Sequence record: MK250017.1
Strand: one strand, 5' to 3'
Length of the DNA: 64,000 bases
The translations under genes were made by a program, and so were the position numbers. Position 1 is the stretch's first letter. Each line of letters begins with the position of its first letter. Positions 5,679 through 63,189 of the stretch are shown one piece after another. The notes under the pieces are model-generated. The model saw nothing but the letters and a program-made list of their open reading frames with translations, was not told the origin of the DNA and did not search any database.

Positions 5679-5894
5679 TTAAAATATTTTAAAATCTTTA
5701 TTTTCATATAAATTTGAAATAGGTTTAAACAATCTCAATACAATTAAACCTACTGCAACAACAAGAATTCCCCATAGTGAACCACTTGCAACCATAACAA
5801 AACCTTGATAAATTGCATAAAATGGTAAACAAATGATACCTAATACTGTCAAAAATAAAACAAATGTAAAGATATACTTAAATAATGTTGTCAT
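5679..5894 (-). CDS. Small membrane protein, 71 aa
   Basis: Two hydrophobic segments (YIFTFVLFLTVLGIICLPFYAIY; LWGILVVAVGLIVL). A TAnnTTTG promoter lies about 40 nt upstream. Confidence 0.75.
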   Translation of the reverse strand: MTTLFKYIFTFVLFLTVLGIICLPFYAIYQGFVMVASGSLWGILVVAVGLIVLRLFKPISNLYENKDFKIF

Positions 5895-5933
5895 AATTTT
5901 ATATTTTTTAATTGTTTATACTTTATTTATATT

Positions 5934-5944
5934 ACAAAGATACA
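5934..5944 (-). promoter_or_regulatory. Bacteroidota-type -7 promoter element (TGTATCTTTGT), copy 1 of 4
   Basis: Contains TAnnTTTG. The identical 11-mer recurs at 9749, 12341 and 59639, always upstream of a minus-strand start. Confidence 0.75.
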
Positions 5945-5963
5945 TATTTTATTTCAAATAAAA

Positions 5964-5997
5964 AAATCAGTTACCTAAAAAAATAGATAACTGATTT
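5964..5997 (-). terminator. Terminator hairpin after 6003..7388
   Basis: Stem AAATCAGTTA/TAACTGATTT with a T-run on the minus strand. Confidence 0.65.
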
Positions 5998-9721: not shown

Positions 9722-9748
9722 TATTTTATTGATTATTTTATTAACAAT

Positions 9749-9759
9749 ACAAAGATACA
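9749..9759 (-). promoter_or_regulatory. Bacteroidota-type -7 element, copy 2
   Basis: TGTATCTTTGT on the minus strand. Confidence 0.7.
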
Positions 9760-9795
9760 CATTATTCTTTAAATAAAAAAATAATAGTCAAATAA

Positions 9796-11034
9796 TTATT
9801 GTTTATTAATCCATTCTTTTACTTCATTAATATTCCAAAATTCTATATAATTCAAATTATTCTACTATGATATATTCCTTTTTTTCAAATCTAATATAGT
9901 CCATGTATAAATAATATTATCATATTGTGACTTCTTACCATTTTTATGTGCATTAGAATTTTCTGCTTTTTCTTTTAAGTTATTCAGCTCATTTAAATCA
10001 TATTCATTATTTTCATTAAATGGATGATAATGATGATAATGAGATCCGTTATATTCAATATATAAATCTAATGATGGTATATAAAAATCACAATTAAATG
10101 GATACAATTCTGATTTATATTGTCTAATACAATCTGAATATTTTTCTTTTAATAAATCAAAACATACATCTTCTTGATATGATATATTAAATGAATTATT
10201 TAATAATTTTGTATTATAAATTTTTTTCTATATTTCATTACTACTTAATATAGATGAAATTAAATTTTTATAGTATTGTGTCTANNNNNNNNNNNNNNNN
10301 NNNNNCTTTTCTAAACATGTATTTTTTATTTTATCTTTTACATATTTAAGTTGACCAATATTTACGATACTATTAATATCATCTTCATTAGAAGCATATT
10401 TTTTAATACATGTATCTAATGACTAATTTCGAAATTTTTGAACTTTAAATACAGAATCAACCCCATACTTTTCTAAACATGCTTTATAAGTTTTTTCTAT
10501 TTTTTCAGGAATCTAACCTGTATACTCAACACCATATTTTTGTAAACATGTTTCTTTTGATTTTTGTTTAAATATTTCAGATTTTAAAGGGGATGTTACT
10601 CCATATCTTTGTAAACATGTTTCTCTTGCTTTAATTCTATTAGAATAATGTTCATCTCCATATTTTAATAAACATGTTTCTCTTATTTTATTATTAATCT
10701 CTTGCTTTTTATCTACATCACTATATATGTCTTTTAATACTTTTTTAACTGTTATACCATCTAACATATTTGCATGTTCTTTACAACATGTTTTATTAAA
10801 TAATTGATTCTTTTTACCATTCAAAAATTTAACAGGTTTTCCACAAATAACACATACAGGGCGAACCTCTATATTATACTGTATTCTCTTAATTGTTTCT
10901 CTTAATGACTATGAATCAGTATAGCGATTATCTAAATATTCCTTATACCCCTCAGAAATATTAGTTAATCGCTATACATTTATATGTCCATTAGATTTAA
11001 TAAAATAATCTAATATAATCTAATCTGTTACCAT
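9796..11034 (-). CDS. Homing-endonuclease-like PD-(D/E)XK (Vsr/DUF559-type) protein, TAG=Gln, spans an N-gap
   Basis: One frame from ATG 11034 to TAA 9796 through at least 9 TAG and a 21-N gap. N-terminal CVICG...TCC, repeated ETCLxKYGV units, C-terminal CDFYIPSLDLYIEYNG..H and NLNYIEFWN. Confidence 0.8.
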
Positions 11035-12122: not shown

Positions 12123-12299
12123 TCATTTTACCTAAAATAACTCATATGGTACAATATCATTCTCTTTAATTTCAATAGCATTACATGTATGAACATACTC
12201 ACCATGTTTTTCCATAAGTGAACGTGCTTCTACATCATCAATAGCATTTACTATAAAAAGTCCTCTATCTGTTTTTACTTTATATAATGTAATATCCAT
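12123..12299 (-). CDS. Hypothetical protein, 58 aa
   Basis: MDITLYKVKTDRGLFIV...; one TAG three codons before TGA. A TAnnTTTG promoter lies 43 nt upstream. Confidence 0.6.
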
Positions 12300-12340
12300 A
12301 ATTTTATTATTTTAATTTACTTCAATATTTTATTAACATC

Positions 12341-12351
12341 ACAAAGATACA
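12341..12351 (-). promoter_or_regulatory. Bacteroidota-type -7 element, copy 3
   Basis: TGTATCTTTGT on the minus strand. Confidence 0.7.
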
Positions 12352-12416
12352 TAAAATATTTGAATGAAAAAAATATTTTCAATAAATATACAAACAATTA
12401 TTTAGTTTAATTAGAA

Positions 12417-13154
12417 ATGTTATTAAATAATCTTGATCAAAATTTTGTTATTGCATTAGATTTCAATTGGTTTTATCCTGATGTTACTGAAAAATGGATG
12501 CCAATATTAAATAGAATGTATTTACCATACATGACATTAGAAGATTTCTTCAATGCATAGATTGCATCTATAAATTTTCCAGGATTAAATTCAGGTACAG
12601 TAATATAGCAAGGAAGAGAATATAAAATTCAGAAAAGACCTGGAAAGCAGGAAGATATGTTATTGGAAAAGACATTAACATTAACTGTTAAAACAGCAGA
12701 AAGTTATATAAGTTATTTTGTAGCAAGACATCAATATGATTTATATTTAAGATTAGGATAGTTAACACCTTTATACCTTCCTAATATATCTGTTTCTTTA
12801 TTGGATGATGGCGGTTTTGAAACAGTTACATACTGTTATTAGCAATTAACACCGACAAGTATAGGTGATTTATCTATGTCATATGCAGCTCGTATGGGTT
12901 CGTTTAATACATTTACATGGTCTTTTGTATATAACTATTATGATGTATATATTAGAAATGGTAATGGTGAAAGAGAATTAATATCTAAAGAATATGATCC
13001 TTATAAAGATGGAAATAGTGAATTTCTTGATTTGGATGATTCTAAATATTCATCAAAAATACATCCAGGTATTTCATCTAAGGTAAAGATTAATAAATTA
13101 CAGTCTTTATCGAGAAGAGTTCCTGGTTAGATAGGGGTTAATCTAAAAAAATAA
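12417..13154 (+). CDS. Tail-tube-fold protein (T4 gp3/gp19/gp54-like), 245 aa, TAG=Gln
   Basis: ATG 12417 to TAA 13152 through 5 TAG. QIASINFPGL and PTSIGDLSMSY...FNTFTWSFVYNYYD resemble tube/terminator proteins (product call is inference). Confidence 0.6.
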
Positions 13155-13166
13155 TTTAATAATAAT

Positions 13167-13397
13167 ATGTGTGATTGCGTAGTTTATAATACACCTATGA
13201 ATACAATAGGTGTAGGAGATCCTGTTCCATTTGGTGTAAATTCATATGGTTCAGGTGATAGATTTGATACGACTCCTGGTAGTAAATCAAAAAATAAAAA
13301 TAAGAAAATATATTCTAAACCTCCAGTTTAGCATGGATTTAACGGAATTAAACAAATGCCGTTAATTGTTATGAGTAGTAAAAATAAAAAGAGATAA
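13167..13397 (+). CDS. Hypothetical protein, 76 aa, TAG=Gln
   Basis: ATG..TAA with one TAG, followed by a terminator. Confidence 0.6.
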
Positions 13398-16728: not shown

Positions 16729-17166
16729 AATTACTGGTAATTTGAGAATGATAGAATATATAGATTTTTGATTAGTGAAATTTTGATTAGTTAATATTAT
16801 TTAGAATTTGTATAAATTAACATAAAAATAATATTGATTATCAATCAGTTATAAATTATTTTTTAACATTTATTAAAAATATTTAGAAAAATGTAGACTT
16901 TTTCTTAAAACNNNNNNNNNNNNNNNNNNNNNNNNNNNNNNNTTGAGATAGATATTATACATAATATGTAAAAAAATTAAATATATTTTTTAATAATTTA
17001 ATAAGGTAAGCCTTTCGGAAATGTAAATATATTTTGAATATGGTATAGAAATATTTTTTATTTTTATATCATATTTTTATTTTATAGTATATAAAACATT
17101 ATTAATAATTATTAGTAAAATATATGATAAAGTTTTATATTTACTTATTATAATTACTTTAATTTG

Positions 17167-54912: not shown

Positions 54913-55273
54913 AATTAGAAGCTTTATATTTTTTTATTAATTGCTGTATTCTCTTATAAAGATAATAATATTCATTAGTAAATGTTTGATATGAAAACAT
55001 ATAATGTTTTTTATATGTTTCATTACAGTATACTAAATATTTTTTTTGTTCATCTAAATTAAGATTATGTTTAACAATATAATATGCAACATTTATTGCA
55101 TGTATATCTTCTAATGTTTCTTCTAACTTAGATTTAGCATTACTTGTTTCTTCAAGATTATAATTTTCATCTTTTGATGATCTATTAGCAATTAATTTTA
55201 ATTCTTTTCTTTTTGCTATTTCAGATTTAAGATATTTCTTAAATTCAATTAAATTTTCATTAAGTGTTTTCAT
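54887..55273 (-). CDS. Hypothetical protein, 128 aa
   Basis: ATG..TAA, overlaps the start of the PTH2-like gene. Confidence 0.7.
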   Translation of the reverse strand: MKTLNENLIEFKKYLKSEIAKRKELKLIANRSSKDENYNLEETSNAKSKLEETLEDIHAINVAYYIVKHNLNLDEQKKYLVYCNETYKKHYMFSYQTFTNEYYYLYKRIQQLIKKYKASNYEESKINN

Positions 55274-55420
55274 TTTCTTCTTTAATTTGTTTTATTTTTA
55301 TAATAGTGTAATAATTATTTTAAATCAAAAATAAACAAATTAAAGGTGAACCTCTACTTAATGTAACTTACCAATGTTGAAGTTTCATAATTTTCTTTTT
55401 ATCATTTTTTAAAAAAATTA

Positions 55421-55508
55421 GTAGAATGATAGAATTTGATTCGCACAAATTTTCCTGTCTTTGAGATCTCTACACAGATTTTATCGATTATTAAACTACT
55501 ATCTCTAC
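55421..55508 (-). ncRNA. tRNA-like cloverleaf with abnormal anticodon arm
   Basis: Acceptor GTAGA-GATAG / CTATC-(AT)-TCTAC; TA linker; D-arm GTTT..AAAT; stem CTGT/ACAG around a 15-nt loop; T-arm ATTTG-TGCGAAT-CAAAT. Confidence 0.45.
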
Positions 55509-55527
55509 TTCTGTTTGCAAACCATTG

Positions 55528-55599
55528 TGCTCTATACAGGGATCGAACCCGTGATCTGGAAGTTTAAAATTTCCTGCTGTACCGCTTAGCTAATAGAGC
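55528..55599 (-). tRNA. tRNA with UUA anticodon (ochre/amber suppressor type)
   Basis: GCTCTAT/ATAGAGC acceptor, A73, D-arm GCT..AGC with GG, anticodon arm GGAAA-TTTTAAA-CTTCC (anticodon TTA, A31xC39 mismatch), T-arm ACGGG-TTCGATC-CCTGT. CCA not encoded. Confidence 0.88.
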
Positions 55600-55675
55600 A
55601 ATTAAAAATAATCATTACTTCTAATAAAATAATGTAATGATTATTTTATTTTTAAAAATTAAACACTGTTTATTA

Positions 55676-55855
55676 TTACTTTGTCTTTGAAGCCTCAATA
55701 GACTCCTTACGGAATGTCTTAAGCAACTTCTCAATTGCAAGAGAAGCCTTACGTGCACGCTGACCAGCTGCCTTATTACCCTTATCTGTCTGTGCAGTTG
55801 CATCTGCCTGGAAAGCTGCAAATGCCTCATTAATACTTGTCAAAATCTCATTCAT
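55676..55855 (-). CDS. Histone-H1-like (Hc1-type, Bacteroidota family) protein, 59 aa
   Basis: MNEILTSINEAFAAFQADATAQTDKGNKAAGQRARKASLAIEKLLKTFRKESIEASKTK contains the KGNKAAG.RARK.S signature. Ends TAATAATAA. The track shows the wrong frame here. Confidence 0.85.
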   Translation of the reverse strand: MNEILTSINEAFAAFQADATAQTDKGNKAAGQRARKASLAIEKLLKTFRKESIEASKTK

Positions 55856-55871
55856 AATTGTTTTCTTAAAA

Positions 55872-56079
55872 TTAATTTTTATTTATGATTTTATTATTCT
55901 CCCATGTTTTGCTCCAATTTGCATCTGTTTTTAAATGTTGAAAACGAACATATTTGCCTACATTCTTATCAAAATCATTATAATTAAAACTATCTGCATT
56001 TCGTACTACAAAACCTTCAACTTCTTGTGATTTATGTAAATCACAATAATCAGAGAATGCTTTAATAATATTCTTAATA
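55872..56079 (-). pseudogene. Split RNA ligase, piece 3 (C-terminal)
   Basis: (N)IKNIIKAF...EVEGFVVRNADSF...KNVGKYVRFQHLKTDANW: motifs IV and V, then TAA. Confidence 0.88.
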
Positions 56080-57566
56080 TTAAATAATTCACTTATAACA
56101 TATATAACTTTAATATTATATATGACATATATATGATTTGTCTGAAGTGAATCTAGAAAACTACAGATTAAACTAATCTATAGAAAGTCTATATTTAATT
56201 TTAGACTTTTTGAAGAAGTAATATAGTTCAATCAAATCCTTGTATGTAGGTTGTAAATTAAATTCTTCCAACGACTCAAGATACAACTTATTAAACATAC
56301 TCAAATTCGGTCTTATTATATTCTTTTTAATTTCTTTTGTTTTACTTATATATTGATTATAAAACTCATAACCACGCCTACCTATTTCTATTGATGCTAA
56401 TATCATATCAGGTAAATTTAATGAACGATATAGAAAATTACCAATAAAACTTGAATATTCTGGTTTAACTTTTAATAACTTAATATTATGAATATTACAA
56501 CGTTTAGTTAAATTATTCACAAATGTTGTTCTACACCATGAATTATTAACCAATTTATTAAAATATACACCTAAATCTTTATCTGAAGTTTTGATATTTA
56601 AATTCTCTATAGAAATAAGTTGACATTTATAATATATAGATTTATTAATTATATTCTTTACAATTTGTAAAGTCTCATAATTTCTCTTATCTGAAATATA
56701 TTTTCTTTCATTTGAATCAGATGAATATCCTTTATTCTTTAAATTAAAATCTTTATCATTCAATTTTTTAATTGAATAAATACCTGATTTGATAACATCA
56801 AATTCATTTTCAGATTTCCAATCAACAATAGACCATCCTATATAATTAGGATTTAAATCCAAAGATAGTACTCTATTTTTTATAAATTTAGTTTCATAAT
56901 TATAAACATCATTTTCTTCAAATATCACATAAATATATTCTAAATCTAATTTATATGCAATCTTTATTTCTTTTCTTTCTTGTTTCTAATATAGTTTAGA
57001 TAATATCTACTTTCTTTTATTTAATCCAATTAACCATAAATTTATTTTTGTATGTTTATTTGGTTTAAATATAATATTTTCTAAATCTTGTTCTATGTGA
57101 AATTTTCTATTTCCTTTAACTGATTTATTAACTATTTCACCTATTGAATATAAAGCCGATAATCTTTTCTACTTAAACTATTCTTTTGAAATATTGTTCT
57201 TTAATCTCTAAAAATAATTCTTCTTACTGCCAAATATAATTTTCTATTTCTTTGGTATATCATAGAAAGAACATTGAATAAACCAACTATCTAACAAATA
57301 TATATTGTTTAATGTTTTTATTTGTTGTTTTATATCTTTCTAAGATTTACCTTCCTATACTCTATTGTATACAAAATGCTGTACAGAACTATACTATTTC
57401 ATATAATTCCGTATAATATCTAATGATTGTTCATCCGTTCGATATTTAATCTTTAATACTTGCATTTTTAATTGTATATAATATTATATTCTTTTATTAT
57501 TTATCTGAATAATTTTAAAAAATAATAAATTCTTATAAAATATAAATTATAAGGTATTATTATATT
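56080..57566 (-). mobile_element. TnpB-only element B (about 1,487 bp) inserted in the RNA ligase gene
   Basis: Lies exactly between ligase codons ...GTG TAT AA | T ATT AAG. Left flank TATAA, right end TTTAA, subterminal hairpin CTTATAA-N8-TTATAAG. No tnpA. Confidence 0.82.
56116..57465 (-). CDS. tnpB: TnpB-like RuvC nuclease lacking the Zn finger, 449 aa, 11 TAG=Gln
   Basis: RuvC-I VLSLDLNP, RuvC-II ISIENL, VKPEYSSFIGN...LPDMILASIEIGRRG (RuvC-III). The track shows only the TAG-free middle. Confidence 0.78.
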
Positions 57567-57768
57567 TTATACACGCCTCTGTATATTTCGTCTACTATTT
57601 TGATATTATTTTTTTCACAAAATGAAACTGTTTTATCCCATGATAAACAATTATTTTTATCATCGTATATAGAAAAACATTGAAACAATTCATTCACATT
57701 TTTAAATGTATATGATATAGAATGTTTTGCCTGCATGTTTTCACCACATACTCGATAACCGTCAGGAA
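57567..57768 (-). pseudogene. Split RNA ligase, piece 2 (middle)
   Basis: (I)PDGYRVCGENMQAKHSISY...FQCFSIYD...CLSWDKT...IYRGVY: motifs III and IIIa. Not in the track. Confidence 0.88.
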
Positions 57769-59137
57769 TTAAATAACAGTATGTTAAAACTTGAACAAAT
57801 TTGAACTTTGCTCTTTATTAACTTCTTGCTTCACTCTATCACTACTTTTTAGGTTCATTTCTGAACGGTCATCCATAGTTGGATAGTCCACAAGCTTAAA
57901 TTCGGGTGTACTGCACCCTATTATTCTTAAACCTTCATCAAGTATATTTAGTGCTGCATTGTAATCTCTATTAATAAGTTTACCACAATTAGGACAGGTC
58001 CATTCTCTATCACTCAATTTTAATTTCTTAAAAATATAACCACAACAGTTACATGTTTTACTTGATGGATAAAATCTATCTACAAATACTATCTTTCTGT
58101 TATACCATCTTGCTTTATACTCTAATATTCTTCGGAATTCACCAAAATTCATTTCTAAAATACTTTCAGCAAGTTTATGGTTCTTAACCATACCTTTCAC
58201 ATTTAAGTCTTCCATACATATAACTTGGTTTTCGTCAATGAGTGAATTACTTACATAGTGAAGATAGTATTGTTTTCTATCATTTATTGTTTTATATACT
58301 TTAGCAAGTTTAATTCTTGCTTTATTTCTGTTGTTACTTCCTTTTTGTTTTCTTGAAAGTTGTTTTTGAAGTTTATTTAACTTAATTATCTCATTCTTTT
58401 TAAAATGTAAGTTATTGAATACTTCTCCTTCTGATGTGATGATAAAATCTTTTACACCAAGGTCAATACCTACACAATTATCACTATCTTGTAATCCTTT
58501 ATGTATTAAATCACCATCAACCAATATTGACAAATAATATTCACCGCAAGGTAGTTTAGATAATGTTGCTTGTCTAATATTATCATGATGTTTTTGTAAA
58601 TATTGTACATATTTTTTATTACATCTGAACTTAATATTCTTTATATTAGCAAGAGATAACTAATATGTTGTATAATCATTCTTTCTTGAGATGGTACCGA
58701 TTTCAAATCTACAGCTTTGTTTGTTATCATGTTTTGATTTGAATTTTGGATACCCTGTATGTTGTTTAAAGAAACGTTTATATGCATCTAACATATCCAT
58801 TATAGATTGTTTAAGAACTTTTGTATTCTGTTCTCTGAGCCATATAAAATTATCATCTTTCAATAGTTCATGATGAAACCAATAACTGAGTGTAGATCTG
58901 TTTTCAGAAATATTATGTTCTTTATATTGATTTATTTTTCGAGCAAGTGTTTGATTATATACAAAACGACAACAACCAAGCAACTTATTAATTTGTGTTG
59001 CTTGTTCCATATTTGGGTATAATCTTATTTTTATTGCTCTTAACATAATTTATTTTTTTGTTTATTTCTTTTTTCTCTTATTTATTTAAATAATTTTTAT
59101 AAAAATGTACAATATTGTTCAAATTATTTATTTACTA
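57769..59137 (-). mobile_element. TnpB-only element A (about 1,369 bp) inserted in the RNA ligase gene
   Basis: Lies between ligase codons TTA A | TT CCT. An 11-bp direct repeat TGTTATTTAAT (59137-59147 and 57768-57778) makes the exact border slide. No tnpA. Confidence 0.85.
57784..59046 (-). CDS. tnpB: IS605-type TnpB nuclease, 420 aa, one TAG=Gln
   Basis: N-terminal KIRLYPN.EQ...GCCRFVYN, GIDLGVK (D), CMEDLNV (E), SSKTCNCCG/CPNCG Zn finger, NRDYNAALNI (D). Track ORFs 58660..59046 and 57784..58533 join across one TAG. Confidence 0.92.
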
Positions 59138-59390
59138 TTAAATAACACCAATTTTGAATTATATATTTAACTTTTGATTGTCATGGATATGAACTTCCAT
59201 CTATAGATCTTGCATGAATATATCCGTCATTATATACAGTACAATTTTCACCATCCATTTTAACAGTAACTACAACTTCTTTAAACTTATTAAAATGCTC
59301 ATCAGATTTAAGTTTCTTATCATCATCTGTCGCATTAGGTGAGCATGGAAGATGAAATGTACGCGGATATTTTATATAAGTATTATCCAT
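59138..59390 (-). pseudogene. Split RNA ligase, piece 1 (N-terminal), TGA at codon 70
   Basis: KYPRTFHLP.S...TDDDK...VTVKMDGEN (motif I)...HARSIDG. The frame continues past TGA as QSKVKYIIQNWCYL up to the element A border. Confidence 0.88.
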
Positions 59391-59392
59391 AA

Positions 59393-59596
59393 TTAATTAA
59401 ATATAACTTCACACATATCAACATTTACAATTGAATCATCATCTTCAAAAATAAATGCATCTTTATATGTAGGATCATTTTCATTTTTAATTATACCTAT
59501 AGCTTTATTTACTTTCTTACAAGATTTAAATGGTTTTCCAGATTTCTTTTTTACTTTAAAAGGAAATTCTAAAAGTACACTACTATTTGTTGCCAT
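59393..59596 (-). CDS. Hypothetical protein, 67 aa
   Basis: ATG..TAA, TAnnTTTG promoter 44 nt upstream, probably co-transcribed with the split ligase. Confidence 0.7.
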   Translation of the reverse strand: MATNSSVLLEFPFKVKKKSGKPFKSCKKVNKAIGIIKNENDPTYKDAFIFEDDDSIVNVDMCEVIFN

Positions 59597-59638
59597 ATTT
59601 TATAAAAATTAAAAATGTATCTTCATATTAATTATTAT

Positions 59639-59649
59639 ACAAAGATACA
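59639..59649 (-). promoter_or_regulatory. Bacteroidota-type -7 element, copy 4
   Basis: TGTATCTTTGT on the minus strand. Confidence 0.7.
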
Positions 59650-59671
59650 TAAAAATATTTTTATATGAAAA

Positions 59672-60646
59672 TTATTGATGTAAAATAATTTGCAATTTAA
59701 ATACAAGTCCTAATAATGTCACAAACTTATCAATAGATGTTGCAAGCATAGAATTATATTCTGCTGTTGCAATAAGAATAAGTGGAAGTTTATTTCCAAA
59801 TTGTGGACATGTTGTTAAAATAAAATCAGGAAAATCTTTACCGATTGCAAGAACTGCATCATCTGCACGTGTAGACCAATCAGCAACAAGTTTCTTATAA
59901 TTATTTACAGGATCTGGTTTATCTATAATAAGTTTAAAAAGATCTGAACAATCATATGTATTTGATAACATATCAGCTGATAATTCTTTTGCCCCTCTTG
60001 TATAAAGATTCTGAATCTTATTTAAAAGTGAACGCATATCAGGAAATGAACTTCTAACAAATGATGTTACTGTTTCATCTGTATATTGAATATTAAATTT
60101 TGTTAATATATATTTAATACGCTCAAGATAACCATTAAACAAATAAGTTTCTTCTTCTTTAGTAACAGGATCTATTGCTACAAGATTAAATCTAGATTGA
60201 ATAGGTTCTGGTACTTTATCAATATAATTACAGTTTGCAATAAATCTTACAGTTTTATGATATTTCTCAATAGTAGCACGAAGAGCTTTCCATGCTTCAA
60301 GTGAAAGTCCGTCACACTCTTCAAGAACAATAACCTTTAATTTTTCTTCACCAGAAAACAATGAAGATTGTGAAGCAAATGCGATAACTTTATCTCTAAT
60401 TGTATCAATACCATTTTCAAGTGATGCATTAATTTCCAAAACTGTATAACCCTTTGATAATATGCGAGTTAATGTTGACTTACCAGCACCAGGAGATCCA
60501 GCAAATAAAATATTATTTGTTAATCCATGTTGAAGGACTTCTCTAATTCGTGGTACAATAATTGCTTGATCCAATGTTTGTGGTCGTAACATTTCAGTAA
60601 ACAACTTCTGTGTTACATGAGTCTGTGTTGTATTATTATTTTCCAT
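59672..60646 (-). CDS. Sliding-clamp loader AAA+ subunit (T4 gp44 / RFC-small-like), 324 aa
   Basis: RPQTLD, GSPGAGKST, INAS.E.GIDTIR, VLEECD, FIANCN, IQSRF. No TAG. Confidence 0.92.
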   Translation of the reverse strand: MENNNTTQTHVTQKLFTEMLRPQTLDQAIIVPRIREVLQHGLTNNILFAGSPGAGKSTLTRILSKGYTVLEINASLENGIDTIRDKVIAFASQSSLFSGEEKLKVIVLEECDGLSLEAWKALRATIEKYHKTVRFIANCNYIDKVPEPIQSRFNLVAIDPVTKEEETYLFNGYLERIKYILTKFNIQYTDETVTSFVRSSFPDMRSLLNKIQNLYTRGAKELSADMLSNTYDCSDLFKLIIDKPDPVNNYKKLVADWSTRADDAVLAIGKDFPDFILTTCPQFGNKLPLILIATAEYNSMLATSIDKFVTLLGLVFKLQIILHQ

Positions 60647-60680
60647 ATATTATAGTAATTAAAATATACCTTATTTAAAT

Positions 60681-60709
60681 TTTATACTATAAAAATATAA
60701 AAATGTCTT
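60681..60709 (-). promoter_or_regulatory. AAGACA-N17-TATAAA promoter
   Basis: Same class as the others, upstream of the clamp loader. Confidence 0.55.
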
Positions 60710-60824
60710 AATCAATTTATATATGTATTACTATATAAAAATAGAGAATTATATAATATTACTACTATATAATTCTCTCTTAAATTAAAATATATATTTA
60801 TGAAATTATGGAATTTTGTAAAAA

Positions 60825-61715: not shown

Positions 61716-62921
61716 TTAGTTAAAATTTTTTTTAACTGGATTCATCACTAACCCTCTATTTGTTGGAGATATAATCTCTTCACAAACTACATTTAAATAT
61801 TTTCTAAGTATATTTAAACTTCCATTTATATCTGCATTAATTAATATATTATTAGTTACATATAATCCTCTCTTTATACGTTTTCCTGAAAAATTATAAT
61901 GTTTATAATCTGAATTACATACTGGTATATAATCATTATCAAAAAATGATGCTTTACTTGTATATGATTCTTCTTGTAAAATAACATTAATTCCTTGTAA
62001 TTTACATTTATATTTTAACATATTAATTAGTATTTCAAAAGGAATAGATACAAAATTTTGATTATTTTTATTACCTAATTTAGTCTCTTGTTTCCAACCA
62101 TTATTTTTACCTATAATTAATGTATTAATGGATTGTTCAACTAATTGATTAACTATATATTTAGATACTTTATGAAAATAATCTTTAATTTTATTATTTC
62201 TCTTTAATGATAATCTATATAATCTATTTGACTAGTTCTTATGATTTTTTAATTTTAATTCTGATTGAAATTTTGATTTTTGCTTATTATAAAATTGATT
62301 TATAGATTTAATAGGTTTTCCATTTATAATAAATGATTTAGTTACATTAGAAATACAAGTGCATAAATTATCTATACCCAAATCTATAGACATATACCTA
62401 TGATTATCAGATTTTATATTTTTTTCTTTTATTTCATAAATTACTTCAAGTAAAATATAATTATTACGAGGTACAATACGTACTTGATTAATATTATTAT
62501 GTTGTATTTTAAATTGTATATTAGATTTTGGTAATTTGAGTATATATTGTTTTAATAAATTAGGAGATAATGTCATATGATTATAAATAACAACCTATCT
62601 ACCTTTTGTTTTATCAAGATAATTTGGGATTTTCGCATTTACTTTTTTATATGAATTAAAAAATGATTTATAATTCCAATAACATAATCTTATTATTTGC
62701 TAAGATGTATTAGCTGGTAATGACCTATAATCTATTTGATTTTCATTTTGAAATTCTTTACATAACTTATAATAATTTTTAAATGATTTATCTTTAAAGA
62801 ACTATATACGTATTCTATATAATGCTTGATTATATAAATTTTTTGATAAAAAACATAAATTATCAAGTTCATTATATCTTTTATCATTCTTTTTTATTAT
62901 ATGACGTTCTACTAATTTCAT
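61716..62921 (-). CDS. tnpB: TnpB nuclease (IS200/605-related, no Zn finger, EESYTSK type), 401 aa, TAG=Gln
   Basis: MKLVERHII...SKNLYNQALY...NTSQQII, MSIDLGIDNL (D), IIGKNNGWKQ, QEESYTSKASFFD, INADINGSLNI (D). Four TAG. No tnpA nearby. Confidence 0.88.
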
Positions 62922-62925
62922 ATAT

Positions 62926-62954
62926 ATTATATGATATAATATTAAAATAGTCTA
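62926..62954 (-). promoter_or_regulatory. TAGACT-N17-TATAAT promoter of the third tnpB
   Basis: TAGACT 62954-62949, TATAAT 62931-62926. Confidence 0.6.
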
Positions 62955-62979
62955 AAAATAAAAGGTAAAGAAATAAAAA

Positions 62980-63189
62980 TTATCTCTTTACCTTTACAAA
63001 CTTACCTATTTTATTTTTACTACAGTCTGAACAACTTATAATCATATCCTGATTCTTATCAAACTGCTTATCAAAATTTTTTATCTATTTTGCAAAACTA
63101 TACATAGTTCCATAATATTCTATATTCTATGAACCATGTCCCTATGTCCACATTCCTTTTAAAAAATAAATGTTTCTGTATTTCTTCAT
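62980..63189 (-). CDS. Hypothetical protein, 69 aa, TAG=Gln
   Basis: ATG 63189 to TAA 62980 with 3 TAG. Not in the track. Confidence 0.55.

What the first reader, a model, noticed from the sequence alone, without database searches (positions are those of the whole stretch)
55872..59390. RNA ligase gene cut into three pieces by two transposase-less TnpB elements; removing both restores the exact frame
Seen: pieces 59390-59138 (253 nt), 57768-57567 (202 nt) and 56079-55872 (208 nt) sum to 663 nt = 221 codons and join as ...QNWCYL|IPDGYRVCGEN...IYRGVY|NIKNIIKAF...EGFVVR...KYVR. This places nucleotidyltransferase motifs I, III, IIIa, IV and V in order. Each insert carries only a tnpB-like gene, and both junctions fall at T(T/A)TAA. 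Established: IS200/605 TnpB is an RNA-guided nuclease that cuts the empty (excised) allele, and these elements excise scarlessly. Inference: in this phage, TnpB-only cassettes behave as RNA-guided homing elements that spread between co-infecting genomes via phage recombination, with this ligase gene as a hotspot. Alternatively the gene is regenerated by DNA excision using a transposase supplied in trans.
Basis: partly seen in the sequence, partly recalled or inferred. Interest (0 to 1): 0.9.

Follow-up and report, generated by a model that had tools for sequence, protein, structure and literature searches.

The report
Phage ligase gene split by transposons
In the gut megaphage Lak-A1, a dispensable RNA ligase gene has been broken by two small insertion sequences that each carry an RNA-guided nuclease gene; related phages still hold the intact and half-broken versions, and the inserts look as if they spread recently between phage genomes.

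Summary
The window is Prevotella phage Lak-A1, which reads TAG as a sense codon. The three pieces sum to 663 nt. Two related Lak-like contigs carry an uninterrupted 220-codon gene with exactly the predicted junctions, matching Pfam RNA_ligase end to end. Two other contigs carry insert 1 only; Lak-A1, A2 and C1 carry both.

Insert 1 is an IS200/IS605-type element with an intact ISDra2-like TnpB. Insert 2 is a tnpA-less IS607-type element. Its 449-aa ORF has no Pfam, NCBIfam or PHROG hit, but a 92%-identical homologue folds as Cas12f/TnpB.

- Lak-A1 itself encodes a complete IS607 copy with a serine transposase about 246 kb away.
- No ribozyme is present. Piece 1 has an in-frame TGA here, and the single-insert allele has a TAA, so the gene is decaying rather than being rescued.
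- The insert 1 junction is ambiguous within an 11-nt repeat. Family comparison suggests a TTGGT-like motif, not TTTAA.

The homing idea gains indirect support. The inserts differ at 0-1 of 1,369-2,856 nt between genomes whose ligase pieces differ at 7-8 of 663 nt (p = 8e-6 to 8e-4). Cleavage itself is untested.

The parts
59138..59390 (-). RNA ligase piece 1: codons 1-84 plus 1 nt, containing motif I (KMDGEN). Has an in-frame TGA at 59183-59181 in this genome.
   Evidence: TGG in six other alleles.
57769..59137 (-). Insert 1 (1369 nt): a non-autonomous IS200/IS605-type element. The register is ambiguous by 11 nt. The register consistent with the wider family is about 57776-59144.
   Evidence: Absent from L133 and L134. 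The right-end hairpin and conserved tip TTTTAACATACTG(T) are shared with 17 other IMG/VR contigs, and flanks diverge after it. RNA-library contigs of other copies diverge at 57775.
57784..59046 (-). tnpB of insert 1 (420 aa, one in-frame TAG). ISDra2-like, with the RuvC D/E/D motifs and the CxxC...CxxC zinc ribbon present.
   Evidence: NF040570 at 310 bits; 8bf8/8h1j at E 4e-60.
57776..57960 (-). 3' end of tnpB plus the right end of insert 1. This is the predicted omega (guide) RNA scaffold, ending in a hairpin and a 13-nt conserved tip.
   Evidence: Conserved across the matching viral contigs. Contigs from RNA libraries lie here, which is suggestive only.
57567..57768 (-). RNA ligase piece 2 (motifs III and IIIa).
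   Evidence: Contiguous with piece 3 in G001/L131-L134.
56080..57566 (-). Insert 2 (1487 nt): a non-autonomous IS607-type element that has lost tnpA. The register is ambiguous by 3 nt (TAA).
   Evidence: Absent from G001 and L131-L134, leaving an exact in-frame joint. 85-88% copies lie next to an IS607 transposase gene in Lak-C1 and Lak-A1. Skipping joints are seen in one DNA run and two RNA-library runs.
56116..57465 (-). tnpB-like ORF of insert 2 (449 aa, 11 in-frame TAG). A divergent Cas12f/TnpB-like RuvC protein without a zinc ribbon.
   Evidence: No Pfam, PHROG or NCBIfam hit. Family alignment A1 has invariant D203 and E287 and near-invariant D353. The AF2 model of a 92% homologue has pLDDT 95. 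The top 40 Foldseek hits are all Cas12f, TnpB, Cas12k or other Cas12-type nucleases (incl. Fanzor2, LaTranC). Profile-vs-PDB hits are Cas12f at E 0.007.
56080..56290 (-). Structured 3' region of insert 2 overlapping the ORF end. Candidate guide-RNA scaffold plus right end, ending ...TTATTTAA.
   Evidence: Conserved stem-loops, with one U-A to G-C compensatory change among six copies. MITE-like derivatives keep the left end plus the last ~240 nt.
55872..56079 (-). RNA ligase piece 3 (motifs IV EGFVVR and V KYVR, and the stop codon).

Best explanation
Two unrelated, non-autonomous insertion sequences sit in an accessory RNA ligase gene of the TAG-recoded megaphage Lak-A1.

Insert 1 is an IS200/IS605-type element: an ISDra2-like tnpB plus a guide-RNA right end. 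It arrived first. Insert 2 is an IS607-type element that has lost its serine transposase gene and keeps a divergent, zinc-ribbon-less tnpB-like gene. It arrived later, in a gene that was already dead.

The interruption is at the DNA level only. There is no ribozyme, so the ligase is not made from this allele, and it is decaying (a TGA in Lak-A1, a TAA in the single-insert lineage).

Inferred, not shown:
- The inserts persist and move between Lak genomes during co-infection. Each nuclease, guided by the RNA read across its right end, would cut the insert-free allele, where the adjacent motif and target are joined. Phage recombination would then copy the insert in. A 2026 review calls this 'transposon non-restorative homing'.
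- Insert 2 can additionally be moved by the IS607 transposase of the complete copy elsewhere in the same genome.
For: Identity of the elements.

Allele series intact / insert 1 only / both, with exact joints.

Gene dispensable and decaying:
- No ligase homologue anywhere in Lak-B1, and no DNA similarity across the locus in all nine Lak-B records.
- Independent nonsense codons occur only in insert-bearing alleles.

No intron: the Rfam E<=5 scan of 55000-60000 finds only a tRNA. Only ~95-115 nt lie upstream of each ORF.

Mobility:
- Many filled/empty polymorphisms of both families among Lak-A2, C1, B1 and G001.
- Lak-C1 has 5 insert-2-family copies against 2 in A2.

Cognate transposase in the same genome.

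Recent horizontal spread:
- Inserts differ at 0-1 of 1,369-2,856 nt between genomes, against 7-8 of 663 nt in the ligase pieces (Fisher p 8e-6 to 8e-4). Including 2.9 kb of downstream flank gives p 1e-5 to 1e-11.
- The same pattern holds at a second TnpB locus.

Nuclease catalytic residues are intact. The empty allele joins a TTGGT-like or TATAA motif to the sequence that follows the right end, as the TnpB model requires.
Against: - No cleavage, guide-RNA or transposition assay exists for either element.
- The adjacent motifs are inferred from few sites and AT-rich, ambiguous junctions.
- Some right ends of insert-2-family copies are identical to their target motif (ATTATAA), which would not protect the donor from self-cleavage.
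- Low insert divergence could also come from ordinary recombination. The genomes compared are related, so the pairs are not independent.
- Substitutions in insert-bearing ligase alleles are about 5 non-synonymous or nonsense to about 9 synonymous by hand count. That is less than neutral decay predicts, so some differences may predate insertion, or the gene may still have been under selection for part of the tree.
- Several other insertions are not clean, with target nucleotides lost or rearranged. This does not fit simple transposase chemistry or simple homing.
Confidence: 0.55

Rival explanations
1. The inserts are passive passengers. They were inserted once by transposases, are inherited vertically, and are shuffled by ordinary phage recombination. 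TnpB plays no part in their spread.
For: Transposases are available. The IS607 TnpA is in the same genome. Y1 TnpA genes occur in the assemblies (two Bacteroidales, one labelled Bacilli) that hold close TnpB1 relatives. Lak genomes are mosaics with patchy divergence.
Against: Zero to one difference across both inserts, while each of the three short ligase pieces around and between them carries differences in at least two of the three comparisons, is hard to get from random recombination tracts. The nuclease active sites are conserved.
Confidence: 0.25
2. The ligase gene is regenerated at the DNA level by scarless excision, with a transposase supplied in trans. The interrupted allele would then be a reversible off-state.
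For: IS607 and IS200/605 transposases leave scarless donor joints (PMC10690162, read). A cognate IS607 TnpA is in Lak-A1. Joints that skip exactly 1487 or 1369 nt occur in public runs.
Against: - Those joints also stand in a DNA run and in assembled genomes as stable alleles with their own SNPs, so they need not be excision products.
- No Y1 transposase for insert 1 was found in any of five Lak genome records searched.
- Both excisions would be needed, and Lak-A1 would still have the TGA.
Confidence: 0.12
3. The inserts are IStron-like and are spliced out of the mRNA, so the ligase is still made.
For: IS605 and IS607 IStrons with tnpB exist and make insertions harmless (PMC10690162, PMC4227781). 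Joined forms are seen in RNA libraries.
Against: - No group I or II intron match at E<=5.
- The left ends are only ~95-115 nt, against the 581 bp of native left-end sequence used in the wild-type Clostridium botulinum IStron substrate.
- No junction register gives the U|...G boundaries of group I introns (inspection).
- Nonsense codons lie in the exons.
- The joined forms exist as DNA alleles.
Confidence: 0.04
4. The split gene is an assembly artefact.
For: These are metagenome-assembled genomes, and the elements are repeated.
Against: The same structure appears in four Lak-A1 records, in Lak-A2 and in Lak-C1. The single-insert form appears in independent IMG/VR assemblies. Logan contigs of other studies cover parts of the stretch, one of them reaching 128 nt from piece 2 into piece 3 across the insert 2 joint, i.e. 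the insert-2-free allele. Paralogues within a genome are at most 88% identical, so they would not collapse.
Confidence: 0.01

Closest known systems
IS200/IS605-family tnpB-only elements (ISDra2 type) with omega/reRNA-guided TnpB
   Same: Insert 1 encodes a 420-aa TnpB aligned end to end with ISDra2 TnpB at E 4e-60, with the RuvC D/E/D motifs and zinc ribbon. It has a right-end hairpin and a conserved tip, no tnpA, and scarless empty alleles.
   Different: - It resides in a TAG-recoded megaphage and has one in-frame TAG.
- An 11-nt identity between target and element end is not expected from Y1 chemistry.
- The adjacent motif looks like TTGGT rather than TTGAT, which is inferred only.
- No Y1 TnpA was found in any Lak genome searched.
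IS607-family elements (serine-recombinase TnpA plus TnpB), for example the CboIStron and ISFba1 systems
   Same: - Full copies in Lak-A1 and Lak-C1 have a 201-aa IS607 transposase (NF033518, 169 bits against a cut-off of 110) directly upstream of the tnpB-like gene.
- The right end finishes with a motif resembling the target motif (TTTAA against TATAA). This parallels TCGG against TGGG in CboIStron.
- Empty sites are scarless.
   Different: - The nuclease is not recognised by Pfam, NCBIfam or PHROGs and lacks the zinc ribbon.
- There is no group I intron.
- Both genes are written with many in-frame TAG codons (7 and 10), so they can only be translated under the phage's code.
- The targets are AT-only.
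Intron or intein homing and intronless homing in T4-like phages; 'transposon non-restorative homing' (PMC13565253)
   Same: The presence/absence polymorphism sits at one exact site among co-circulating phages, and the insert is much younger than its flanks.
   Different: The proposed endonuclease is RNA-guided. The insert is not spliced, so the host gene is lost. Cleavage has not been demonstrated.
RNA ligases of Pfam PF09414 and phrog_34045 / phrog_24030
   Same: The intact 220-aa allele covers the whole Pfam model, with motifs I, III, IIIa, IV and V in order.
   Different: It has no NCBIfam hit and no solved close relative. It has no homologue in Lak-B1 and no DNA match at this locus in any Lak-B record. 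Substrate and role are unknown.

Membership tests
RNA ligase (Pfam PF09414) | End-to-end match to the family profile above the curated cut-off | tested here: met
   The intact allele L134 5749-6408 scores 88.6 bits (cut-off 27) over profile 1-171/171. The window's three pieces match 1-32, 65-129 and 145-171.
RNA ligase (Pfam PF09414) | Open reading frame with the motif I lysine (KxDG) in this genome | tested here: not met
   Motif I KMDGEN is present, but the gene is split by 1369 and 1487 nt and has TGA at codon 70.
IS200/IS605 (insert 1) | TnpB with the RuvC D-E-D motifs and zinc ribbon | tested here: met
IS200/IS605 (insert 1) | Y1 (HUH) TnpA in the element or in the genome | tested here: not met
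   PF01797 is absent at E<=0.01 from Lak-A1, A2, B1 and G001, with only a 16.5-bit sub-threshold hit in C1. Y1 genes exist in three of the five assemblies holding close TnpB1 relatives (two Bacteroidales incl. Prevotella sp. CAG:1092, one labelled Bacilli), but are not adjacent to them.
IS200/IS605 (insert 1) | Subterminal right-end hairpin and a conserved cleavage-proximal tip, with flanks diverging just after | tested here: met
   17 further IMG/VR contigs share the scaffold end, a GAACAA...TTGTTC hairpin and TTTTAACATACTG(T).
IS200/IS605 (insert 1) | Insertion 3' of a fixed adjacent motif, without target duplication | tested here: inconclusive
   An 11-nt repeat blurs the junction. Three of the five left flanks read contain TTGGT (two as TTGGTG); the other two read TTGGC and TTGAT.
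IS607 (insert 2) | Serine-recombinase TnpA of the IS607 type next to tnpB in full-length copies | tested here: met
   NF033518 at E 1e-49 and PF00239 at E 2e-24, in Lak-C1 17474-18079 and Lak-A1 MK250016 43752-44357. A distant family member also has an upstream Resolvase gene.
IS607 (insert 2) | Scarless empty site, with a short core shared by the target and the right end | tested here: met
   Empty alleles in G001 and L132-L134 are exact. Shared TAA, ATTATA or ATTATAA at three further filled/empty pairs.
TnpB/Cas12 superfamily (insert 2 ORF) | Cas12f/TnpB-like fold with conserved RuvC acidic residues | tested here: met
   The model was built on homologue P0006 (92% identical), pLDDT 95. Foldseek E 4e-8, with the top 40 hits all Cas12f, TnpB, Cas12k or other Cas12-type nucleases (incl. 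Fanzor2, LaTranC). D203 and E287 are invariant and D353 is >=90% conserved.
TnpB/Cas12 superfamily (insert 2 ORF) | Zinc-ribbon (TNB) domain; match to PF07282 or PF01385 | tested here: not met
   No Pfam hit. Only 8 residues separate YSSFIGN from the third acidic residue, and there is no CxxC pair.
TnpB/Cas12 superfamily (both) | RNA-guided cleavage of a target next to the adjacent motif | not testable with these tools
   Only conserved 3' structure and RNA-library contigs over the insert 1 scaffold.
IStron | Group I intron ribozyme within the element | tested here: not met
   The Rfam E<=5 scan has no intron hit. The left ends are too short.
Homing element | Empty and filled alleles at the same site in co-circulating genomes, with the insert younger than its flanks | tested here: met

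The most novel reading that the evidence does not exclude
Lak megaphages host their own transposons, written in the phage's TAG-recoded code. These include an unannotated, zinc-ribbon-less TnpB clade paired with IS607 transposases. The elements spread between co-infecting phage genomes by RNA-guided cutting of insert-free alleles. This would be a natural case of TnpB-driven 'non-restorative' homing in viruses, caught with all three allelic stages of one gene.
Probability: 0.4. Interest if true: 0.75.

Novelty: new variant of a known kind. Interest (0 to 1): 0.6.

Why it matters
TnpB is known to keep its transposon in place by cutting the excised site in bacteria. Spread between co-infecting viruses has so far only been proposed in principle (PMC13565253). 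This locus offers a natural series (intact, one insert, two inserts) with defined empty-site targets, so the idea can be tested directly.

It also exposes a large family of compact, about 450-aa Cas12f-like proteins: at least 1000 clusters at 50% identity. Pfam, NCBIfam and PHROGs do not recognise them, and they travel with IS607 transposases.

It further shows insertion sequences whose genes can only be read under a phage's alternative genetic code.

For phage annotation, it shows that 'missing' or fragmentary genes in huge phages can be IS-split genes.

Tried and rejected
- Group I/II intron or IStron: Rfam at E<=5 over 55000-60000 found only the tRNA. Rejected.
- TGA read as Trp (code 4) to explain the stop in piece 1: rejected. 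Genome-wide ORF statistics support only TAG recoding, and all other alleles have TGG.
- Empty allele in Lak-B: not informative, because the whole ligase locus is absent there.
I did not resend it. Remote searches and the fold used the database homologue P0006 (92% identical), so the fold evidence applies to the family, not letter for letter to the window's protein.
- BLASTP of the insert 2 ORF against TnpB1 gives only a weak match at the RuvC-II motif, E 0.2.
- Literature: no paper in the library mentions Lak phages together with TnpB.
- Read laying used contigs only. The joined forms in RNA libraries cannot be told apart from transcripts or DNA of insert-free strains, so they are not counted as splicing or excision.
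- I could not explain the Lak-C1 paralogue of insert 1. There, 28 nt of native flank lie inside the right end.
- I did not derive reliable adjacent-motif logos, because there are too few unambiguous junctions.
- The dN/dS on ligase alleles rests on too few sites to decide.
Full report
**What the window is.** The region 55600-60700 is 100% identical to Prevotella phage Lak-A1 (MK250016, 290277-295377) and 98% identical to Lak-A2 and Lak-C1. The window is about 25% G+C. With TAA and TGA as the only stops, ORFs of up to 2507 codons open up, carrying dozens of in-frame TAG. The phage therefore reads TAG as a sense codon (code 15). A suppressor tRNA with anticodon UUA lies at 55527-55599.

**Check of the observation.** On the minus strand, pieces 59390-59138, 57768-57567 and 56079-55872 are 253, 202 and 208 nt.
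- They match Pfam RNA_ligase PF09414 colinearly at profile 1-32, 65-129 and 145-171. They match phrog_34045 at 6-67, 86-148 and 151-212.
A search of IMG/VR with the piece 2+3 protein found four Lak-like contigs.
- Two of them (L133; L134, from a 553,716-bp contig) have neither insert. They encode an uninterrupted 220-aa protein whose junctions are exactly those predicted. That protein covers PF09414 1-171/171 at E 7e-25.
- The other two (L131 = G001, and L132) have insert 1 only, with pieces 2 and 3 fused exactly.
- Lak-A1, A2 and C1 have both inserts. No insert-2-only allele was seen among the assembled genomes and contigs examined. This fits insert 1 arriving first.
- In Lak-B1 and Lak-B3 the whole locus is absent, replaced by about 72 and about 400 bp; the other Lak-B records show the same ~31% coverage. 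Lak-B1 has no ligase homologue anywhere. The gene is therefore accessory.

Codon 70 is TGA in Lak-A1 (59183-59181) and TGG in all six other alleles. The single-insert alleles have TAA at codon 79, where the others have CAA. These are two independent nonsense changes, both in insert-bearing alleles and none in the intact ones. Lak-A2 and C1 have two and one private amino-acid changes. The counts are small: about 5 non-synonymous or nonsense changes against about 9 synonymous ones within the insert-bearing group, by hand count. They do not prove neutrality. Still, this genome cannot make the ligase even if both inserts were removed.

**Insert 1.**
- Its ORF (59046-57784, 420 aa, one TAG) has PF12323, PF01385 and PF07282 and matches phrog_506. 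It aligns end to end with ISDra2 TnpB (8bf8, 8h1j) at E 4e-60, with the GIDLG, MEDLN and RDYNAA motifs and two CxxC pairs. NCBIfam places it nearer IS200/IS605 TnpB (361 bits) than IS607 TnpB (187 bits).
- An exact 18-mer from the end of its predicted RNA scaffold occurs at 20 sites on 18 IMG/VR contigs, two of them (L142, L143) being the single-insert contigs L131/L132 themselves. In nearly all of them it is followed by a GAACAA...TTGTTC-type hairpin (one lacks most of it) and by the tip TTTTAACATACTG(T) or a one- or two-base variant, after which the flanks diverge. RNA-library contigs of other copies also break off at 57775. This is the right-end architecture of IS200/IS605 elements.
- It fixes the right end at about 57776. 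Because an 11-nt repeat (TGTTATTTAAT) brackets the insert, the left junction then falls after ...TTGGTG(T). Three of the five left flanks read contain TTGGT (two as TTGGTG); the other two read TTGGC and TTGAT, close to ISDra2's TTGAT.
Why the first 8-9 nt of the element equal the first nt of the right flank is unexplained.
- No Y1 transposase (PF01797) is present in Lak-A1, A2, B1 or G001, and only a sub-threshold fragment in C1. Close TnpB1 relatives (70-80% identical) occur in two Bacilli-labelled faecal MAGs, two Bacteroidales MAGs and a Prevotella scaffold. Y1 genes occur in three of those five assemblies (one Bacilli-labelled, the Bacteroidales MAG RUG12352 and the Prevotella scaffold), but not adjacent to the TnpB relatives.

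**Insert 2.**
- Its ORF (57465-56116, 449 aa, 11 TAG) has no Pfam, PHROG or NCBIfam hit. The family is nonetheless large. A word-indexed search found 2472 proteins, most on short, repeat-broken contigs or on Lak-sized contigs. An exhaustive search of 50%-identity representatives found at least 1000, 279 of them below 1e-30.
- In a 79-member alignment, D203 and E287 are invariant and D353 is at least 90% conserved. The profile's best PDB matches are all Cas12f or OrfB proteins over the RuvC-II to YSS segment, E 0.007-0.03.
- An AlphaFold model has pLDDT 95 and pTM 0.89. Its top 40 Foldseek matches are exclusively Cas12f, TnpB, Cas12k or other Cas12-type nucleases (incl. Fanzor2, LaTranC), best E 4e-8.
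- There is no zinc ribbon: only eight residues separate YSSFIGN from the third acidic residue, and there is no CxxC.
The remote jobs therefore used the 92%-identical database homologue P0006.
- 'tnpB-like' is thus right, but this is a divergent clade.

**The transposase.**
- A Resolvase-domain search found one hit in Lak-C1 and one in Lak-A1. In both it is a 201-aa ORF directly upstream of an 85-88% copy of the insert 2 ORF.
- It matches the NCBIfam equivalog 'IS607 family transposase' over its whole length: 169 bits against a cut-off of 110, E 1e-49.
- Lak-A1, the window's own genome, therefore carries a complete IS607-type element at MK250016 43752-45758, about 246 kb from the ligase.
- A distant family member also has a Resolvase gene just upstream.
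- Insert 2 is a tnpA-deleted derivative. Its left end corresponds to the outer left end plus the tnpA-tnpB spacer of the full copy.
- Its right end finishes ...TTATTTAA and its target is ...GTGTATAA. Other copies show shared ATTATA(A). This mirrors the TGGG target and TCGG right end described for the Clostridium botulinum IS607 IStron, where the transposase leaves scarless donor joints (PMC10690162).
- tnpA and the tnpB-like gene carry 7 and 10 in-frame TAG. These elements can only be expressed under the phage's code.

**Mobility.**
- tblastn finds 2-4 TnpB1-family and 0-5 insert-2-family copies per Lak genome.
- Flank mapping shows many filled/empty pairs among A2, C1, B1, G001 and the window, plus MITE-like left-end-plus-right-end derivatives.
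- Apart from the ligase, the insertion sites I inspected appear to be intergenic or at gene ends, judged by eye from the junction sequences. Two hits in one gene are therefore better read as a second, neutral insertion into a dead gene than as a hotspot.
- Some junctions are untidy, with 13-28 nt of target lost or displaced. I cannot explain this.

**Evidence bearing on homing.**
- Across Lak-A1, A2, C1 and G001, insert 2 has 0/1487 differences and insert 1 has 0-1/1369. The three ligase pieces have 7-8/663, and the 2.9 kb downstream has 28-35.
- One-sided Fisher tests of pieces against inserts give p = 8e-6 to 8e-4. With the downstream flank included, p = 1e-5 to 1e-11.
- A second TnpB locus shows the same dip.
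- Differences occur as close as 9 nt to the left end of insert 2, but none within 30 nt beyond either right end. That is where a guide would have to match.
- The inserts are therefore younger than the backgrounds they sit in. This is what copying into empty alleles during co-infection predicts.
- Both intact alleles carry a synonymous change at about position 16 of the predicted insert 1 target, and L133 carries another at about position 7. This could mark resistance, but it is only an observation.
- Public runs contain contigs that skip exactly 1487 nt (one DNA run, two RNA-library runs) or 1369 nt (one RNA-library run). Since such alleles exist as DNA, these do not show splicing or excision.

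**No splicing.** Rfam finds no intron. The ORFs start about 95-115 nt from the left ends, and no junction register gives group I boundaries. Conserved stem-loops overlap the 3' end of the insert 2 ORF, with one compensatory U-A to G-C change. This resembles a guide-RNA scaffold, not a ribozyme.

**Verdict.** The mechanism most consistent with the data has two steps. First came IS insertion: by a Y1-type transposase, source unknown, for insert 1, and by the phage's own IS607 TnpA for insert 2. Then came maintenance and lateral spread by RNA-guided cutting of empty alleles. The ligase is lost rather than rescued. The first step and the gene loss are well supported. The homing step is supported only by population-genetic evidence and needs the assays listed.

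Noticed in passing
window 55527-55599 (-): A suppressor tRNA with anticodon UUA, which reads UAA and, by wobble, UAG. It sits immediately downstream of the ligase, in a genome where TAG is recoded but TAA ends nearly every ORF.
   Followed up: partly
window ~61719-62920 (-), ORF 61716-62987: A third TnpB element (PF01385 + PF07282, 5 in-frame TAG). Among the genomes compared it is present only in Lak-A1. Its start codon lies 2 nt inside the junction. The last ~34 nt of the element are a diverged copy of the promoter-like left flank (TTTTAGACTATT...TATAATAT).
   Followed up: partly
window ~13147-13168; Lak-C1 210131-211469 (L008): The window holds the empty site of a Lak-C1 insertion of the insert 1 family (81% identical). 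In Lak-C1, 28 nt of native flank replace the right-end hairpin and sit between the RNA scaffold end and the conserved 12-nt tip. This arrangement is unexplained.
   Followed up: partly
window 59391-60719: The flank upstream of the ligase, a clamp-loader-like gene region, is only 92-94% identical among Lak-A1, A2, C1 and G001. The downstream flank is about 99% identical, so this is a local divergence hotspot.
   Followed up: no
Lak-C1 68689-68987 and 384246-384519; G001 59990-60258; MK250016 177419-177637: MITE-like derivatives (~200-300 bp) of the insert 2 family keep the last ~240 nt, and three of the four listed also a short left-end piece. They have their own right-end tip (...GTTAAATATCT).
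   Followed up: partly
window 5891-5967, 9726-9782, 12293-12374: A short (~60-80 nt) dispersed repeat that also flanks TnpB copies in G001 and Lak-C1.
   Followed up: no
window 57752-57995: In two metatranscriptome runs, contigs with the highest word depth lie on the 3' end of tnpB1 and its right end, the predicted guide-RNA scaffold. Depth from contigs is not a reliable measure of expression.
   Followed up: no
window 10285-10305 and 16912-16942: Two runs of N (masked or gaps).
   Followed up: no
Lak-A2 509302-510078: At the site of the complete IS607 copy of Lak-C1 and Lak-A1, Lak-A2 retains only the 3' half of the tnpB-like gene. The deletion starts exactly at the element's left boundary and removes tnpA.
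   Followed up: partly
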